From the IMG/VR virus record IMGVR_UViG_3300045973_000169, positions 1 to 64,000 of that record: a stretch of 64,000 nt of DNA. The stretch is one strand, 5' to 3'. Positions within the stretch are counted from its first letter, which is position 1. Every line of letters starts with the position of its first letter. This document shows, piece by piece, positions 23,720 through 38,879 of the stretch. The notes beneath the pieces were generated by a model that saw only the letters and a list, made by a program, of their open reading frames with translations, had not been told where the DNA came from and did no database searches. The position numbers were made by a program, and so were the translations under genes.

Positions 23720-23806
23720 GCCTCTATGGTGGAATTGGTAGACACAAGGGACTTAAAATCCCTCGACAGTAATGTCGTCCCAGTTCGACTCTGGGTAGGG
23801 GCACCA
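23720..23806 (+). tRNA. tRNA-Leu(TAA)
   Basis: GCCTCTA/TAGGGGC acceptor stem, D-loop GG, anticodon loop CTTAAAA, long variable arm, GTTCGAC T-loop, CCA end. Confidence 0.93.
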
Positions 23807-24435: not shown

Positions 24436-25902
24436 CAATCCGCAAACCATGGAGGTTAGGTGTTAGTTTTGAATCTAACCTTCATGGTTGTAGTACACTT
24501 GAGGAACATATATTCTTCAGTGCATATTATATTACGAAAAGGAGCTTCAAATGTTTACCACAAAAACTTATTCCCGTCAAAAGCTTAAACAGTGTCGTAC
24601 TAAGATAGTATTACTCCTCGCAAGAAATCCTCGAACGTATAGTTCTGGAAGTGTCTCATCGTGATGTACATTCCTTGTATGTTTACTATTACTAAATTTT
24701 TTAGTTAAATTGTTAGATCCGACTCTTGTAAAAAGTTAGCCTTTTAATTTTGACATTTTTTGGAAACTTAATCAAATCAATAGCTTGTGTTAATTACGCA
24801 GAGATAGTATATTTAGTATCACTAAAAACTTCTATATGCGTATAACATGAGTATGATTGTATTTCTAATAGAAACTTATACCGTAACTTATTGATATTGT
24901 TAAATAAAGGGGGAATATGCATAAATTGTACAGTCACTGTTCTATTAATGTCTATTTCAAGTTGTCTCTATTTAGACTATAAACTTATTCCCAACTTATC
25001 CAAACTTATACTCATCTCACTCCACTATAATCACTTCTCTACAGAAACTTATTCCTTTCCTCGTCCTTACCCATCTAACTTAGTGTTATTGTTCGGAGTT
25101 ATCTTCCCACTGTATATAGGTGTTATTGTTTGGTGTTTAATCTATTATTTAAAAGGTGGTATTGTATGAAAAAGGTTATATTTGAAGAAGAAGTTAGTGA
25201 TACTGTTAAGTTTAATGATTGTAATATTCGTTCTCGGCCTATTGGAGTCCAAGTAGGTAATAAGAAATATTTTACTACTGATGCTGATATGAAAGATTCT
25301 GCTTATCAGTTAGTTGATCTTGATGAGAATTTTAAATTCGTCCTTGGTTCTTGTGTTAGAGGTCAGGATACTCAAAGCTTCCTTAAGGATATTAAGATTA
25401 AGTTTCCTCTTTGTCTTATTTATGAGTTTAATTCTTCTCGTGAATTGCTTGTTTGGTTACTTAAATAAAAGGGGTGTTATATGTTCTGGTTATTAGTTTG
25501 GTTTACTCTTGGTGTTATACCTTGGTTCTATGATATTAAGAAACATAAGGTTCTTGTTATAGGGGATATATTGTCTTTTATAATATGTGCGGCTTTCGGT
25601 CTCTTTGGTTTTATTTGGTTTGTTGTTCTCCTTAGTCGTGATGATAAGGTTTGTCTTGACAATCCATTTTATAAAAGGTGACCTATGTTCCCTATTCTTA
25701 TGAGCCTTGTTCTCTGGTATATTATAGGAGTTGTATTATCCTTGTATACATTCTCAATCAATGATTGTTCTGATAAGTATATTGACCCTGTTGTTTTTAT
25801 ACTTGCTTTACTTGGACCTTTTGTTATTGGGATGGTGTTCTTTGCTTTACTTGAACGTTATTTAAATCGTGTTAAAATTAAGAATCCATTTTGTAAAAGG
25901 AG

Positions 25903-30826: not shown

Positions 30827-30911
30827 GGGGTTGTAGCGGATCGGCCTTCTAAGCCGTGCACATAACACCGTAATGGATCGCATGCTGGTTCGAATCCAGT
30901 CAGCCCCTCCA
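30827..30911 (+). tRNA. Atypical D-armless tRNA-Arg(TCT)-like RNA
   Basis: GGGGTTG/CAGCCCC acceptor stem, CGGC-CTTCTAA-GCCG anticodon arm, GCTGG-TTCGAAT-CCAGT T arm, CCA. No D arm; long variable region. Confidence 0.7.
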
Positions 30912-31322: not shown

Positions 31323-31397
31323 GGGTCTCTCTTCCAGTGTGCAGGAAGATCCGCTCATAACGGATTAAGTAGAGTTCGATTCTCTAGGGACCCACCA
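31323..31397 (+). tRNA. tRNA with CAT anticodon (Met or Ile2)
   Basis: GGGTCTC/GGGACCC acceptor, ATCCG-CTCATAA-CGGAT, TAGAG-TTCGATT-CTCTA, ACCA. Confidence 0.85.
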
Positions 31398-33944: not shown

Positions 33945-34460
33945 ATGGAGGTAACTGTAATGCCAACTTGCATAAAATGTAATGATGTTTTTCCTGTCTG
34001 GATGTGGATAGATGGAAAAAAGAAAAATTTAAATAATAGAAAATATTGCATTGAATGTTCTCCTTTTGGGTCACGTAATACAAAAAAACTTGAATTAGAA
34101 GATGATTCTCCTTTTAAGATTTGTATTGTTTGTAAAAAGCAATTTGAATATATAAGAGAGAAAGGACATAGAAAAACAAAATGTAATTCTTGCCACACAA
34201 GAGAAAAAAATCAGTCTGTTAAAATAAGAGCGGTTAATTATCTTGGTGGAAAATGTTCTATTTGTGGTTATAAGAAGAACTATAGTGCATTATCTTTTCA
34301 TCATAAAGATATAACACAAAAAGATTTTCCTATAGCTAATAGTAAAGGGTTAAAATGGGAGCTTATGCAAAATGAACTTGATAAGTGTGTTCTACTTTGC
34401 TCTAACTGCCATGCAGAATTACATTATCCAAGTCTTGATGTACAAAGTTATCTGTTTTAA
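33945..34460 (+). CDS. HNH endonuclease (same family as 30912-31253)
   Basis: LGGKCSICGY...FHH...KDF...ELDKCVLLCSNCH. Confidence 0.88.
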   Translation: MEVTVMPTCIKCNDVFPVWMWIDGKKKNLNNRKYCIECSPFGSRNTKKLELEDDSPFKICIVCKKQFEYIREKGHRKTKCNSCHTREKNQSVKIRAVNYLGGKCSICGYKKNYSALSFHHKDITQKDFPIANSKGLKWELMQNELDKCVLLCSNCHAELHYPSLDVQSYLF

Positions 34461-34487
34461 AAATTCAAAACTCAAAAAGGAAAAGAA

Positions 34488-35117
34488 ATGGCAAGAGAAA
34501 TTACAGTTTGTGAGGCGCTAAAAGAGTTGAAGACTCTTGATGCACGTATCAATAAAACAACCAAAGATGCACTGTTTATCACTGTTTCTGTTGGTGGTAA
34601 GTTGCCTGTTGGACAGAAGTCTGAAACTGACTTCGAGACCAAAGCTAAAGGTTCCTTGCAGTCGATCAGAGATCTGATTGCACAACGCAATGAGATTAAA
34701 GCTTCTATCGTTGCTTCTAATGCAGTTACCAATGTTACTGTTGGTAATATTCAGTACACTGTTGCTGGTGTTATTGAGCGTAAGAAGTCAATTGAATACG
34801 AAAAGGAGCTTGTAAAGGCTTTTGGTCTTCAGTTGCTTAAGGCATTACGTGAAATCGAGAATACTAATGCGAGAGCATCACAGGTTCTTGATGGCCATAT
34901 CTCTACTATCCTTGGTAAGGATGCCAAAGAAAAGGGCGGTAAAGAAGTTGATGACTTCACTGCTCAGTTCATGGCAAGGAATGAAGCAAAGGTTGTTGAT
35001 CCGATCAATGTGAAAGAGGAACTTGATAAACTGGATGCTTCAGTTAGAGAGTTCGAAGCAAATGTTGATACAGCTTTATCTATCAGCAATGCTACAACAA
35101 AGATCACTGTGAAATAA
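34488..35117 (+). CDS. Coiled-coil protein, DIP1984/septicolysin-like pattern
   Basis: 'EALKELKTLDARI', 'I..SNA.T.V', C-terminal 'VD.ALS.SNATT.I'. Confidence 0.55.
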   Translation: MAREITVCEALKELKTLDARINKTTKDALFITVSVGGKLPVGQKSETDFETKAKGSLQSIRDLIAQRNEIKASIVASNAVTNVTVGNIQYTVAGVIERKKSIEYEKELVKAFGLQLLKALREIENTNARASQVLDGHISTILGKDAKEKGGKEVDDFTAQFMARNEAKVVDPINVKEELDKLDASVREFEANVDTALSISNATTKITVK

Positions 35118-35123
35118 TAGTTC

Positions 35124-35463
35124 TATCCTTGGCTATACGAAAACGATTAATAAAGATACCTTCTCATAATAGGTTAATTATGAACTTCGACTTGATATCG
35201 GATCATAATTTTGACTGTCTAATACACATGATAAATTATATTTAAGCGCGTAGCGCTCATCTAAAAGCTCAGGTACATCAGGAGTTAGGTTACAAGAATC
35301 ATTTAAACTGCGTAGAAGCCTTTCGTGGGTGGAGCGGGATTCAAGTCTTTTTAGTTCAAGATATAAGACTTATGTTTACATGATTCGATAAAACCCATGA
35401 ATTATTTTATAAGCATTTATCTTTTAAGCTTTTCGTTTGTACATGGCTGTATAGCCAGGGATA
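35124..35463 (+). ncRNA. Putative ~340-nt structured RNA
   Basis: Closing 15-bp helix TATCCTTGGCTATAC/GTATAGCCAGGGATA (one G-U), inner helix GAAAA..TTAATAAAGATA/TATCTTTTAA..TTTTC; ORF-free. Confidence 0.7.
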
Positions 35464-35476
35464 TAATATAAATTTA

Positions 35477-35554
35477 AGACTAGTTTCTGCAAACCACACA
35501 AACATGAGAAGCCCTGAACTGGGCAAAGTGGGGTAGAGGGAGAGAACTAGTCTG
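35477..35554 (+). ncRNA. Stem-C(A/T)GCAA element 1 (in the 5' leader of the DUF2828 gene)
   Basis: TAAG-start, AGACTAGTT/AACTAGTCT stem, CTGCAA, A/C-rich linker, ends CTG. Confidence 0.65.
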
Positions 35555-35600
35555 TTAAAATCAATCTTCCTCTACCTCACCCAAATTAAAGGAGAGAAAA

Positions 35601-36977
35601 ATGGCTGCAAAATATACATTAACAGAAAATGGGGCTAAGACCCTATCCGATAGTGGCAATCCTTTAGTGAATTTGTTTTTTACTATTGGGTCTGCTCGTA
35701 ATAACCCTGAAGTAACAAGAGCTAACTTTAAGAAAGCTTTTGAGTTTGATGCATTGAGAGCTTCTGCTATAGTTCTTTGTGCTCGTGATATTCGTCATAA
35801 TGGTATGGGCGAACGTCAGATCTTTCGTACGCTTCTTAAAGACATGGCTGGTAGTGGTAAGATCTATACTCAGAAGATAGTTGAGCTTATCCCTGAGATT
35901 GGCCGTTTTGATGACCTCAAAGCAGTTGAAGGTACTGTTTATGAGAAGATGGCTATTGATATCTTTGCTAAGGCTATCCGTGAGCGTAATGTTCTTGCTG
36001 CTAAATGGGCAAAGCGTGAAGATAAGAAACTTCAGTTAGCTTTAGGGCTGAATGAAGCTGGACTCCGTAAGCTCTTAGCATCAATTCGCAAAGAGCATAT
36101 CGTTGAGGCCAAGATGTGTCTTAAGGACTGGAAATCTATCGAGTATGGTAAAATTCCTTCAGTTGCTGGTACACGTTATTCAAAAGCATTTCATAAGAAT
36201 GATGGTATTCGTTATCGTGCTTTCATTGATAACCCTGATACTAAGGTGAATGCATCTGCTTCTTTCCCTTATGATGTATATCGTATGTGGAGTAGCAGAA
36301 CTTGTCAGCCTCCTGAGATTAACAAGTATTGGAATAATCTGAAAGAGCTTGAGCTTTCAGGTAGTGTCCTTGCTATTGTTGATACATCAGATTCTATGAC
36401 TTGGTTTAAGGTTGCTGGTAGCCTTGTTCCAAGGGATATTGCTGTATCATTGGGCGTCTACTGTGCTCAGAAGATTGAGGGTAAGTTCAAGAATAATATG
36501 ATGACCTTCAATTCTAACCCTGAGTTCTTTACATTGCCTACAGGTGATGTATGTCAGGCATTTGATAAGGTAATGAGATCCAATATTGGTGGCAGTACTA
36601 ACATTCAGAAAGCTTATGAGAAGATTCTTTCCATGGCTCAGACTGTTAATGCTACTGATAAGGATATGCCTAAGTTCATCCTTATTATATCTGATATGCA
36701 GTTTAATGGCTGCACAGATAGACCTTCTGATACTGTCTATGACAATATGAGAAAGAAATATAAGGCTGCTGGATTCACTATGCCTAAAGTGATATTCTGG
36801 AATATGGATGCTCGTCATGATCAGTATCCTACTGCTTCATTTCAGAAAGAAACTGCTTTAATTAGTGGTTTTAGTCCTAATATTCTCAAGGCAGTTCTTA
36901 AGGGGCAAGATGTTGTTATCACCCCTGAAGGAATAATGAATGAGGCAATTGCTCCATTCATTGAGATGTTAAAATAG
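35601..36977 (+). CDS. DUF2828-family helical + vWA (MIDAS) protein, Ro60/TROVE-like by inference
   Basis: TENGA, RDIR..G.GER..FR, G..DDL, LAAKW..RE, MIDAS DTSDS, ISDMQF, VIFWN, SGFSP. Confidence 0.8.
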   Translation: MAAKYTLTENGAKTLSDSGNPLVNLFFTIGSARNNPEVTRANFKKAFEFDALRASAIVLCARDIRHNGMGERQIFRTLLKDMAGSGKIYTQKIVELIPEIGRFDDLKAVEGTVYEKMAIDIFAKAIRERNVLAAKWAKREDKKLQLALGLNEAGLRKLLASIRKEHIVEAKMCLKDWKSIEYGKIPSVAGTRYSKAFHKNDGIRYRAFIDNPDTKVNASASFPYDVYRMWSSRTCQPPEINKYWNNLKELELSGSVLAIVDTSDSMTWFKVAGSLVPRDIAVSLGVYCAQKIEGKFKNNMMTFNSNPEFFTLPTGDVCQAFDKVMRSNIGGSTNIQKAYEKILSMAQTVNATDKDMPKFILIISDMQFNGCTDRPSDTVYDNMRKKYKAAGFTMPKVIFWNMDARHDQYPTASFQKETALISGFSPNILKAVLKGQDVVITPEGIMNEAIAPFIEMLK

Positions 36978-37173
36978 ACCAGCCGAGCCTATGCTCTACC
37001 TAGTAGGATTCTTTCTGGGATTTGAACCCAGCAGAAGATACAAAGTGATTGAGTAAGCTCAAATAGGATTCATGAAGGTACTGCAGTGCATCATGATTAA
37101 CTGGTTGCGAATTAGTAGAGAGGGACTGTTGCTATTACGATTGAGCTTTACGTGTATAGATGCTTGTCCCTCT
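36978..37173 (+). ncRNA. Multi-hairpin structured RNA
   Basis: ACCAG/CTGGT closing helix with internal hairpins (TCTTTCTGGG/CCCAGCAGAAGA, TTGAG/CTCAA, TCATGA/TCATGA), then an AGAGGGAC/GTCCCTCT hairpin. Confidence 0.45.
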
Positions 37174-37180
37174 AGTTTTT

Positions 37181-37364
37181 GGGCACATGACGAAATGGTA
37201 AACGTGAGAGGAAAGTATATACTTAGTATTTATTTAATAAGTGGATTAATTGCCCATAAGTTAATTATTAGAAAAGTATATGACTACCTCTTGGTGATGA
37301 TGGTGACGGCTAGCCTTTATTATGTCATCTAGCCTTACAGGTTCGAGTCCTGGGGTGCCTACCA
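37181..37364 (+). ncRNA. Expanded tRNA-like RNA (184 nt)
   Basis: GGGCAC/GTGCCT-ACCA acceptor, ACG-AAATGGTAAA-CGT D arm, AGAGG/CCTCT anticodon stem extended by an ~80-nt AT-rich hairpin, long variable arm, CAGG-TTCGAGT-CCTG T arm. Confidence 0.65.
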
Positions 37365-37376
37365 ATAATAAATTTA

Positions 37377-37625
37377 AGAGAGATTACAGCAAACAAAAAC
37401 TTTTTTTAGACAAAAAACGATAGGGTTCGATTCCCCTAAGCCGGGTGGTGGTGAGATTTCTCTCTGTATTAAATTAGTAGATATATAAGGATCCATTCAG
37501 CAACTAAAAACTTTTTTAATTGATAAAAAAACAAAAAGTGATCCTGTCTTAAAGATATATAAGGAAGAGTTCAGCAATCCAAAAAACAATCAAATGCTAA
37601 CTTGAAAATGTTAAAAATCTTCCTG
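37377..37625 (+). repeat. Tandem array of three stem-CAGCAA-anticodon-loop elements (37377-37466, 37488-37546, 37562-37625)
   Basis: Each has TAAG start, a covarying stem (AGAGAGA/TCTCTCT, AGGATC/GATCCT, AGGAAGA/TCTTCCT), CAGCAA, AAAAAC, a small hairpin, and a CTG end. Confidence 0.8.
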
Positions 37626-37968
37626 TTTTAATTAAGGTTGTAGGTTATCCAGTATCAAAACCTTCTGCGAATAGATTTTATACGACTTGGCGATTAGGAA
37701 ACTTAAGCGTTACTTTAGAGTATCGAAAGTCCTAGTCCAAATCCAATTAATACGATGACAGCTATTTTAATAATATACCTTGGCACTAGGCGACAAAGGA
37801 CACTGTTATTAATTTAGGGCGATGTGATTATTAATTGAACAACAGTATGCCAATTCATACTGTAATTAATACTGTACGAGCAGTATAAAAGCAGATTGGT
37901 CTCTACTGCTTAACTGGGGCGAAGGACTCAGCAAAAAATGGAGACTACTTAATTAGTTAAGAGGTATT

Positions 37969-38439
37969 ATGAAAGGTAATAAAAAGATCATCGAGACTCT
38001 GAACACAAGACTTGGAGAAGAGTTAACAGCTATTCACCAATATGTAGTTCATTCTCAAATGGTAGAAAATTGGGGCTATAGTAAACTTTCTAAGTATATT
38101 ATGGACCGAGCAAAAGATGAGATGCGCCATGCAGAAATGCTTATGGAACGTATTGTATTCCTTGAAGGTGCACCAGATACAACTAAATTGGGACCTATTG
38201 CAATTGGGCCTAAAGTACCTGATATGTTCAAAAATGATCATTCATCAGAAGTAACAGCAATAAAGAATTATAATGAAAGTATTAAACTTGCAGTAGCTGA
38301 AGGAGATAATGGAACAAGAGAAATCTTAGAGTCTATTCTTCGTGATGAAGAAGGTCACATTGATGCTATCGAAGCCAATCTTTCTCAGCTTGAACAAATG
38401 GGAACTCAGATTTATCTTGCTGAACAACTAGAGGACTAA
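37969..38439 (+). CDS. bfr: Bacterioferritin
   Basis: MKG...ELTAIHQY..H...NWG, DEMRHAE (heme Met), FLEG, DEEGHID ferroxidase ligands. Confidence 0.93.
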   Translation: MKGNKKIIETLNTRLGEELTAIHQYVVHSQMVENWGYSKLSKYIMDRAKDEMRHAEMLMERIVFLEGAPDTTKLGPIAIGPKVPDMFKNDHSSEVTAIKNYNESIKLAVAEGDNGTREILESILRDEEGHIDAIEANLSQLEQMGTQIYLAEQLED

Positions 38440-38879
38440 TATGGATCTCTTAGCTTTTTTTAAGCTTGTAGTAGTAGGAGCTATTGCTTGGTTTAGTGCG
38501 CCATTTATAATGGTATTAGCATTCTTAACTTTAGCATTTGGTCTCTACTTGTCTGTTGATTTTATTGGTTGGGTGTTATATCATTGGTATACATTCAAGA
38601 AAAAGATGACAAATTATAAAAGAAAATAACCCGCCTTCAATAAGGTGAAAACTGTTCTGGAAGTATCTGTGATAGTTGTTTACCTTACCATTCTAAAACT
38701 CTATCACAGAGCTTCCTATATCTAATAGGGAGAATATATATGAAATCCAAAAAACTTAATCCGCTTGAACTTGCAATAAAAGAATTGAAGAAACACCCTG
38801 ACTATATGAATACTGGTAACTTTATAACTGCTCCTGGGGGTAAGAAGCTTGAAGTGCTTGACTTACGAGGTCAATACTA

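What the first reader, a model, noticed from the sequence alone, without database searches (positions are those of the whole stretch)
35477..35600. Possible autoregulatory switch in the DUF2828 leader
Seen: element 1 (AGACTAGTT/AACTAGTCT) overlaps a second 16-bp helix, GTGGGGTAGAGGGAGA (35528-35543) with TCTTCCTCTACCTCAC (35565-35580). The loop of that helix contains the 3' strand of element 1, and it ends just before the AAGGAG SD. The two helices are either pseudoknotted or mutually exclusive. Inference: the protein binds its own leader copy to control its translation, titrated by the downstream array.
Basis: partly seen in the sequence, partly recalled or inferred. Interest (0 to 1): 0.6.

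Follow-up and report, generated by a model that had tools for sequence, protein, structure and literature searches.

The report
Ro60-like phage gene's leader RNA copy
The "leader switch" is real sequence: it is one copy of an apparently undescribed family of small Y-RNA-like phage RNAs, sitting in the 5' leader of the gene for their likely Ro60-like binding protein, where it may feed back on that gene's translation.

Summary
Both helices lie at the stated coordinates and exceed chance.

What is there is larger than a leader. The DUF2828/DUF7788 protein (35601-36977) has a full-length Ro60 fold (TROVE ring plus vWA). The "element 1" hairpin (35476-35555) is one of four co-oriented RNA units in the window. 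Each unit reads AAG, a 7-10 bp terminal stem, UUC(A/U)GCAA, a variable loop, the stem, then CUGU.

A covariance model of the unit finds 190 copies in 168 homologous phage loci and this window, all on the gene's strand. Long units hold a YrlA-like tRNA module. Short units often show an anticodon-loop-like hairpin. They share the published hallmarks of Dictyostelium Class I RNAs.

In about 40% of loci a unit ends within 60 nt of the start codon, often abutting the Shine-Dalgarno sequence (SD). The leader copy is therefore conserved.

Helix 2 occurs only here and in the closest relative, with compensatory changes. In nested folding it wins. If it is opened, its pyrimidine strand pairs with the SD.

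Autoregulation is plausible but untested; no RNA data exist.

The parts
35438..35467 (+). Promoter-like site, TGTACA-18-TATAAT. The -10 hexamer ends 8 nt before the AAG of the leader unit.
   Evidence: 10 of 12 matches, the best site in 34400-38500. This is a consensus match only and is not conserved in L003.
35476..35555 (+). Leader unit U0: AAG, P1, UUUCUGCAA motif, inner hairpin, P1, CUGU.
   Evidence: Covariance-model hit of 25.5 bits, E 3.8e-4, full length. Direct repeat D4 with unit U1. Conserved in L003 and L005.
35477..35485 (+).
   Evidence: P1 covaries across the family: 99.5% of cells paired and 172 double changes in 83 sequences.
35487..35492 (+). Core motif CUGCAA, a variant of CAGCAA. 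It keeps the invariant T3, C6, C9, A10 and A11 of the Class I 11-nt motif.
35511..35524 (+). Inner hairpin GCCC-UGAACU-GGGC.
   Evidence: Energy -8.2 kcal/mol. L003 has GCUCCA-CCAACU-UGGGGC at the same place.
35528..35543 (+). Helix 2 5' strand, purine-rich and SD-like.
35545..35555 (+). P1 3' strand AACUAGUCU plus terminal GU (CUGU end). It lies inside the loop of helix 2.
   Evidence: A 22-nt block, GAGAACTAGTCTGTTAAAATC, is identical in L003.
35565..35580 (+). Helix 2 3' strand, pyrimidine-rich and anti-SD-like.
   Evidence: It pairs with 35590-35596 when helix 2 is prevented from forming.
35589..35594 (+). Shine-Dalgarno sequence AAGGAG.
   Evidence: It lies 6 nt before the ATG.
35601..36977 (+). 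Gene for a 458-aa Ro60-fold protein (Pfam DUF2828 + DUF7788/vWA; PHROG 850 'RNA-binding protein').
37376..37467 (+). Unit U1. Its loop holds a T-arm-like GGGUUCGAUUCCC.
   Evidence: Covariance model 39.2 bits. Rfam pieces.
37487..37547 (+). Unit U2.
   Evidence: Covariance model 60.5 bits. RF01414 25.8 bits.
37561..37626 (+). Unit U3.
   Evidence: Covariance model 52.8 bits.

Best explanation
The element at 35476-35555 is a leader-embedded copy of the small RNAs that partner a phage Ro60-like protein.

Shown:
- The protein folds as Ro60 (TROVE ring plus vWA with an invariant DxSxS).
- The RNA units form a strand-specific, covarying family tied to this gene inside phage tRNA arrays.
- A unit lies directly 5' of the ribosome-binding site in about 40% of homologous loci.
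- No terminator-like site lies between the unit and the ORF here.

Inferred:
- The unit is transcribed as the gene's 5' leader.
- The protein binds it through P1 and the flanking AAG, C(A/U)GCAA and CUGU, as it binds the free units.
- This binding lowers its own translation once the protein exceeds its free RNAs. The three downstream units score much higher than the leader copy against the model (39-60 versus 25.5 bits) and would compete.

In most phages the repression would be steric, because CUG lies 1-12 nt from the SD. In this clade the unit is 33 nt from the SD and helix 2 would relay the signal. While helix 2 is formed, its SD-like 5' strand holds the pyrimidine 3' strand and the SD stays free. 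If protein bound at the P1/CUGU junction displaces helix 2, the pyrimidine strand pairs with the SD.
For: - Fold: the AF2 model has pLDDT 89.6. The top 13 Foldseek hits are all Ro60/TROVE chains, most aligned over about the full length (1yvr TMq 0.69; 9kop E 6e-9; Thermus phage phiLo Ro60 9l5y).
- Family: 4 + 101 + 85 covariance-model hits, all on the gene strand.
- P1 covariation.
- Leader position: 61 of 153 loci within 60 nt and 52 within 30 nt. Controls give 1 and 2. This holds in 26 of 67 clusters at 70% identity.
- The nearest upstream RNA gene within 120 nt is a unit in 53 loci and a tRNA in none, although the loci hold 334 tRNAs.
- Examples such as ...CATTCTGA|AAGGAG.
- Helix 2 kept in L003: 4 compensatory and 4 one-sided changes in 16 pairs, with purine/pyrimidine polarity retained.
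- SD-unpaired probability falls from 0.64 to 0.20 (window) and from 0.66 to 0.13 (L003) when helix 2 is blocked.
- No terminator-like site between the unit and the ORF.
Against: - There is no RNA, binding or reporter evidence. Only one DNA run holds the sequence.
- Helix 2 is seen in only two sequences.
- Helix 2 (-26.8 kcal/mol) is far stronger than P1 (-9.0), so a switch needs substantial protein energy or a kinetic route.
- Loop lengths of 42, 1 and 11 nt allow a pseudoknot in which both helices coexist.
- Shuffling the pyrimidine strand still sequesters the SD to the same degree in 18% of trials.
- Close relatives L006, L087 and L088 lack a leader copy. L176 and L177 have other leaders.
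- Tight spacing could simply reflect phage genome compaction or joint inheritance of the gene and its RNA.
Confidence: 0.45

Rival explanations
1. The leader copy is one more partner RNA gene in a polycistronic tRNA/small-RNA/mRNA transcript. It is cut out by tRNA-type or RNase E/III processing. It sits next to the ORF because the gene and its RNA travel together and phage spacers are short. Helix 2 would be a processing or stability element, or would hold the excised RNA on the mRNA. There is no feedback.
For: - Units are interleaved with tRNA genes at 8-12 nt spacing in Escherichia phage REP8.
- All 334 tRNAs are co-oriented with the gene.
- Units also occur right after the stop codon in 15 loci.
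- Leader units in other clades are canonical, high-scoring copies.
- Several relatives lack a leader copy.
Against: - Excision at CUGU would leave the SD 1-12 nt from the new 5' end in many loci.
- A unit, never a tRNA, is the nearest upstream RNA gene within 120 nt in the 53 loci that have one; in the other 101 of 154 loci neither a unit (by the strict pattern) nor a tRNA lies there.
- Helix 2 keeps its SD-like/anti-SD-like polarity.
Confidence: 0.35
2. P1 and helix 2 form a constitutive H-type pseudoknot. The two helices stack coaxially with a 1-nt junction, and an A-rich 11-nt loop lies in the P1 groove. This gives a longer, Y-RNA-like stem, a variant RNP scaffold or a 5' stabiliser of the mRNA, with no switching.
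For: - Loop lengths are 42, 1 and 11 nt.
- The 22-nt block covering the junction, the P1 3' strand and UAAAAUC is identical in L003, while helix 2 itself drifts.
- Both helices are kept in both sequences.
Against: - No tool here scores pseudoknots.
- Other clades manage without helix 2.
- The polarity of helix 2 is not explained by this reading.
Confidence: 0.12
3. The helices are chance inverted repeats or DNA-level repeats with no RNA function.
For: The region is AT-rich and repeat-rich. The repeat finder lists 84 inverted pairs in 2.9 kb.
Against: - Strand bias of 190 to 0.
- Covariation.
- Shuffle controls.
- Conservation across phages whose proteins are 35-59% identical.
Confidence: 0.03

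Closest known systems
Bacterial and phage Y RNAs (YrlA, Rfam RF02553) with Ro60/Rsr (Chen et al. 2014, PMC4201824)
   Same: - The RNAs are encoded within a few kb of a Ro60-fold protein gene, on the same strand, often in several copies.
- The 5' and 3' ends form the stem.
- Long units carry a permuted T-arm/acceptor/D-arm tRNA mimic. These units hit RF02553 over its full length at 33-39 bits.
- An RtcB ligase gene lies nearby in Listeria phage LMSP-25.
   Different: - The protein is Pfam DUF2828/DUF7788, with no TROVE hit at E <= 0.01.
- The conserved motif is AAG / UUCAGCAA / CUGU, whereas YrlA has GNCGAAN0-1G.
- Scores lie below the gathering score of 69.
- Short 50-65 nt units have only an anticodon-loop-like hairpin.
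- One unit is built into the gene's 5' leader.
Dictyostelium Class I RNAs (Rfam RF01414; Kjellin et al. 2021, PMC7919456)
   Same: The published hallmarks are present:
- Start AAG.
- A short stem joining the two ends.
- The motif CCUUACAGCAA right after the 5' strand, with the same near-invariant T3, C6, C9, A10 and A11.
- A variable A/U-rich loop.
- End CUGU, with its C pairing the 5' G.
- Length about 60 nt, with genes in clusters.

RF01414 hits the phage units over its full length at 21-35 bits. Validated D. fasciculatum Class I RNAs score 18-30 on the authors' own model.
   Different: - Class I RNAs are eukaryotic, with a DUSE promoter.
- The phage units score below the Rfam gathering score of 41.5.
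- The only proven direct binder is an RRM protein (CIBP).
- No link to DUF2828 is on record.
- The paper reports them as unique to Dictyostelia.
Translational feedback by molecular mimicry (thrS operator mimicking the tRNA-Thr anticodon arm; ribosomal proteins S15 and L20 with pseudoknot operators; T4 gene 32). This entry rests on my own knowledge.
   Same: A copy of the protein's RNA ligand lies next to the RBS of its own mRNA, and the free ligand RNA competes. A pseudoknot or alternative pairing near the SD is involved.
   Different: Nothing has been tested here. The operator lies 33 nt from the SD in this window. The helix-2 relay is an in-silico proposal.

Membership tests
Ro60/TROVE proteins | Helical-repeat ring (TROVE) followed by a vWA domain with a MIDAS motif. 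| tested here: met
   Foldseek aligns the model, mostly over about its full length, to 1yvr, 1yvp, 9l5y, 2nvo and 9kop. D261, S263 and S265 are invariant in 32 relatives.
Ro60/TROVE proteins | Match to the Pfam TROVE profile. | tested here: not met
   Only DUF7788, DUF2828 and VWA_2 match at E <= 0.01. The profile search against PDB TROVE chains gives E 0.26.
YrlA / bacterial Y RNA (RF02553) | Encoded within about 4 kb of the Ro60-type gene, on the same strand. | tested here: met
   All 190 covariance-model hits are on the gene strand, within the 2.5-3 kb flanks fetched for the loci or, in the window, within 650 nt of the gene.
YrlA / bacterial Y RNA (RF02553) | GNCGAAN0-1G motif near the 5' end, plus a tRNA-like T/D/acceptor domain. 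| tested here: not met
   The leader unit has UUUCUGCAA and no tRNA-like arms. A tRNA-like module is present only in the long units of other loci.
YrlA / bacterial Y RNA (RF02553) | Rfam gathering score of 69 bits. | tested here: not met
   The best score is 39.4 bits, in L056. There is no hit in the window.
Dictyostelium Class I RNA (RF01414) | AAG start, terminal stem, 11-nt motif with T3, C6, C9, A10 and A11, and CUGU end. | tested here: met
   All four window units show these features.
Dictyostelium Class I RNA (RF01414) | Rfam gathering score of 41.5 bits. | tested here: not met
   U2 scores 25.8 bits. The leader is not reported. The best phage unit scores 35.2 bits.
Dictyostelium Class I RNA (RF01414) | Expressed as an RNA of about 42-65 nt from a DUSE promoter in Dictyostelia. 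| not testable with these tools
   This is phage DNA and no RNA run holds it. The leader unit is 80 nt long.
Autoregulatory leader operator | A copy of the protein's RNA ligand in its own 5' leader, next to the RBS. | tested here: met
   Covariance-model hit 33 nt from the SD. In relatives the unit lies 1-12 nt from the SD.
Autoregulatory leader operator | An alternative structure that hides the SD. | tested here: inconclusive
   SD-unpaired probability falls from 0.64 to 0.20 and from 0.66 to 0.13 when helix 2 is blocked. A shuffle control reaches 0.2 or lower in 18% of trials.
Autoregulatory leader operator | Protein-dependent repression and competition by free RNA. | not testable with these tools
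   This needs reporter, toeprint or binding assays.

The most novel reading that the evidence does not exclude
The phage units and the Dictyostelium Class I RNAs are the same kind of RNA: the Y-RNA equivalents of DUF2828-family Ro60-like proteins. That family also occurs in eukaryotes. Class I RNAs would then not be unique to Dictyostelia, and their unidentified core partner would be a DUF2828 protein, possibly the uncharacterised pull-down protein DDB_G0281243. In phages these RNAs display tRNA or anticodon-loop mimics, and one copy doubles as a feedback operator in the gene's leader.
Probability: 0.3. Interest if true: 0.88.

Novelty: new variant of a known kind. Interest (0 to 1): 0.72.

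Why it matters
Ro60/Y RNA particles are known in animals, bacteria and a few mycobacteriophages. This work adds three things.

First, the DUF2828 branch of the fold appears to have its own, apparently unannotated RNA family. That branch is present in 711 of 50,697 phage records, including Felixounavirus, KVP40-like and Listeria P100-like phages. The RNA has a sharp signature and lies inside tRNA arrays. This gives a concrete handle on what these proteins do during infection, for example tRNA surveillance or repair, or decoys for anticodon nucleases.

Second, embedding one copy against the ribosome-binding site suggests a simple feedback circuit of the thrS or ribosomal-protein kind. To my knowledge this has not been described for a Ro60-type protein.

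Third, the match to Dictyostelium Class I RNAs makes a 20-year-old orphan RNA class testable. One can ask whether a DUF2828 protein binds them.

Tried and rejected
- Rfam at gathering thresholds finds nothing in the region.
- blastn of the locus against the phage records finds no match.
- A single-protein scan of viral contigs found no relatives. The alignment-based scan worked.
- A search for more window-type leaders with AACTAGTCTGTTAAAAT in viral contigs gave three chance matches, each without the unit's 5' half (AAG, CAGCAA) and apparently inside coding sequence.
- Two contig look-ups returned no DNA.
- L005 has a leader unit but no clear helix 2, and its fold is no better than shuffles.
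- No RNA sequencing run holds the locus.
- ARAGORN, run with introns allowed and with lowered thresholds, calls no tRNA or tmRNA in the flanking structured regions.
- The sigma-70 promoter and terminator scans are at or below shuffle expectation.
- I could not establish whether Dictyostelium has a DUF2828 protein or what DDB_G0281243 is. Avesson 2011 is not held, and the supplements and papers are silent on it.
- The idea that SD sequestration is specific to the helix-2 strand sequence is weakened by the shuffle control.
- Covariation in seed alignment A2 is circular, because the seeds were chosen for pairing. I rely on the strand bias and on A3 instead.

Full report
**Observation.** The sequence is as described. 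AGACTAGTT (35477-35485) pairs with AACTAGTCT (35545-35553). GTGGGGTAGAGGGAGA (35528-35543) pairs with TCTTCCTCTACCTCAC (35565-35580) at all 16 positions if two G-U pairs are allowed. The loop of the second helix holds the 3' strand of the first. The helix ends 8 nt before AAGGAG (35589-35594), and the ATG is at 35601. Hairpins this long occur at two places in the 64-kb window, against 0.05 per dinucleotide shuffle. The leader folds with z = -3.6.

**The protein.** ORF 35601-36977 matches Pfam DUF7788 (1.6e-39), DUF2828 (3.5e-18) and VWA_2, and PHROG 850 "RNA-binding protein". An AlphaFold model built on 32 relatives has pLDDT 89.6. Its top 13 Foldseek hits are all Ro60/TROVE chains, most aligned over about the full length. 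They include Xenopus Ro (1yvr, TMq 0.69), the Ro-RNA complexes, Thermus phage phiLo Ro60 and Deinococcus Rsr. The MIDAS residues D261, S263 and S265 are invariant. The protein is therefore a Ro60-fold RNA-binding protein that the TROVE profile does not reach. Relatives occur in 711 of 50,697 phage records. In some mycobacteriophage records the gene is already labelled "Ro-like RNA binding protein".

**The RNA family.** The leader element shares a 27-nt direct repeat with a downstream unit (D4). All four units in the window have the same plan: AAG, a 7-10 bp stem that joins the two ends, UUC(A/U)GCAA directly after the 5' strand, a variable loop, the 3' strand, then CUGU.
- A strict pattern finds 176 such units on the gene strand and 6 on the other strand, across 166 DUF2828 loci totalling 948 kb.
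- A covariance model built from 49 short units finds exactly the four units in the window, including the two not used to build it. The leader scores 25.5 bits with E 3.8e-4.
- The model finds a fifth unit elsewhere in the 206-kb phage genome.
- It finds 101 and 85 further hits in the loci, all on the gene strand.
- In the 85-hit alignment the stem is 99.5% paired, with 172 double changes. That alignment is fitted to the model, so the figure leans towards pairing.

**Genomic setting.** The genes sit in phage tRNA arrays: 334 tRNAs are co-oriented with the gene and none is opposed. Units are found, unannotated, in cultured phages. Three lie upstream of the gene in Listeria phage LMSP-25, which also has an RtcB ligase gene 1.3 kb downstream. 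Three more are interleaved between tRNA genes in Escherichia phage REP8.

**What the units resemble.**
- Long units contain a T-arm, acceptor and D-arm in the permuted order of YrlA. They hit Rfam YrlA over its full length at 33-39 bits, below the gathering score of 69.
- Of 65 distinct short units, 33 have an inner hairpin with a 7-nt loop showing the U33/R37 signature, with consensus CUNNNAA. Shuffles give 2.9 +/- 1.7. This looks like an anticodon stem-loop.
- Short units hit Rfam Dicty_Class_I_RNA over its full length at 21-35 bits, below the gathering score of 41.5. Those hits cluster at the DUF2828 gene within whole phage genomes.
- The published definition of Class I RNAs lists start AAG, a short stem, an 11-nt motif with invariant T3, C6, C9, A10 and A11, end CUGU with its C pairing the 5' G, and a length of about 60 nt. 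That paper states they were found only in Dictyostelia. The phage units meet these hallmarks.
- Validated Class I RNAs of D. fasciculatum score only 18-30 bits on the authors' own model.
- No held paper links DUF2828 to TROVE, Y RNAs or Class I RNAs.

**The leader copy.** With a relaxed pattern, a unit's CUG ends within 60 nt of the ATG in 61 of 153 loci, and within 30 nt in 52. Reverse-complement and in-ORF controls give 1 and 2. The arrangement occurs in 26 of 67 protein clusters at 70% identity. In many loci CUG(U/A) runs straight into the SD, as in ...CATTCTGA|AAGGAG. That leaves no room for a promoter, so the unit must be on the same transcript as the ORF. The nearest upstream RNA gene within 120 nt is a unit in 53 loci and never a tRNA. 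However, close relatives L006, L087 and L088 have no leader gap. L176 and L177 have other leaders. Here, a promoter-like TGTACA-18-TATAAT ends 8 nt before the AAG, and no terminator-like site separates the unit from the ORF. The promoter match is weak evidence only.

**Helix 2.** It is found only here and in L003, whose protein is 59% identical. Between the two sequences, a 22-nt block covering the junction, the P1 3' strand and UAAAAUC is identical. Helix 2 itself has 6 invariant pairs, 4 one-sided changes, 4 compensatory changes and 2 broken pairs. Purines stay on the 5' strand and pyrimidines on the 3' strand. Helix 2 is worth -26.8 kcal/mol against -9.0 for P1, and nested folding always chooses helix 2. 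Loop lengths of 42, 1 and 11 nt would allow an H-type pseudoknot. This rests on general knowledge of pseudoknot geometry; no tool here scores pseudoknots. If helix 2 is prevented from forming, CUCUaCCU (35570-35577) pairs with AGGAGAG (35590-35596). The SD-unpaired probability then falls from 0.64 to 0.20, and from 0.66 to 0.13 in L003. Shuffling that strand still gives 0.2 or lower in 18% of trials, so the effect comes mostly from its pyrimidine composition.

**Verdict.** It is best read as the leader-embedded member of a Y-RNA-like family that partners a Ro60-like phage protein. I put confidence in that part at about 0.85. Feedback control through the leader copy is the most likely reading at 0.45. 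The main rival is plain co-transcription and processing at 0.35. No RNA data exist for this phage.

Noticed in passing
Short units in many loci, e.g. L025:2374-2437 and L042:603-663: Inner hairpins carry 7-nt loops of consensus CUNNNAA, with differing middle triplets (UGU, CAU, UUU, GUU, UCU, GAU, GUA). They look like a set of anticodon stem-loop mimics. This occurs in 33 of 65 units against 2.9 in shuffles.
   Followed up: partly
window 36978-37375: A highly structured 400-nt spacer lies between the stop codon and unit U1. It ends in a T-arm-like AGGTTCGAGTCCTGG, then GGTGCCT and ACCA (37338-37364). ARAGORN and Rfam call no tRNA there.
   Followed up: partly
window 35118-35470: A roughly 350-nt non-coding domain lies upstream of the leader unit. 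It is closed by an 18-nt inverted repeat (35121-35138 / 35449-35466) whose 3' arm overlaps the promoter-like site. No family match was found.
   Followed up: partly
G000:C1:90992-91060 (outside the window): A fifth unit of the same RNA family lies about 54 kb from the gene (49.8 bits, + strand).
   Followed up: no
L186:4212-4851 (Escherichia phage REP8) and L188:2115-2380 (Listeria phage LMSP-25): Unannotated units occur in cultured phages. In the Felixounavirus they are interleaved with tRNA genes. In the Listeria phage three sit in tandem upstream of the gene, with an RtcB ligase gene nearby.
   Followed up: partly
L176:1-168: A close relative (57% identical protein) has a leader with a 13-bp terminal stem that begins after AAG. 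It has CGCUAA where the motif would be and no CUGU. It may be a degenerate or different partner RNA.
   Followed up: no
L177:700-925 and L178:2299-2460: In two relatives a unit is followed by a tRNA or tRNA-like gene, which is then the element next to the SD. In L177 a CCUGU again lies just before the SD.
   Followed up: no
window 24445-24489: This is the only other hairpin in the window with at least 16 contiguous pairs.
   Followed up: no
window 30827-30908: Rfam calls a tRNA here (33 bits) that ARAGORN does not list. ARAGORN lists tRNA-Leu at 23720-23806 and tRNA-Met at 31323-31397.
   Followed up: no
L003:5139-7261 and L088:4607-5999: TerD and vWA-TerF-like genes lie just downstream of the gene in two relatives. 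NadR-like and NAMPT genes lie downstream in L087, and a NadR-like gene (CTP_transf_like + NUDIX) in L006.
   Followed up: no
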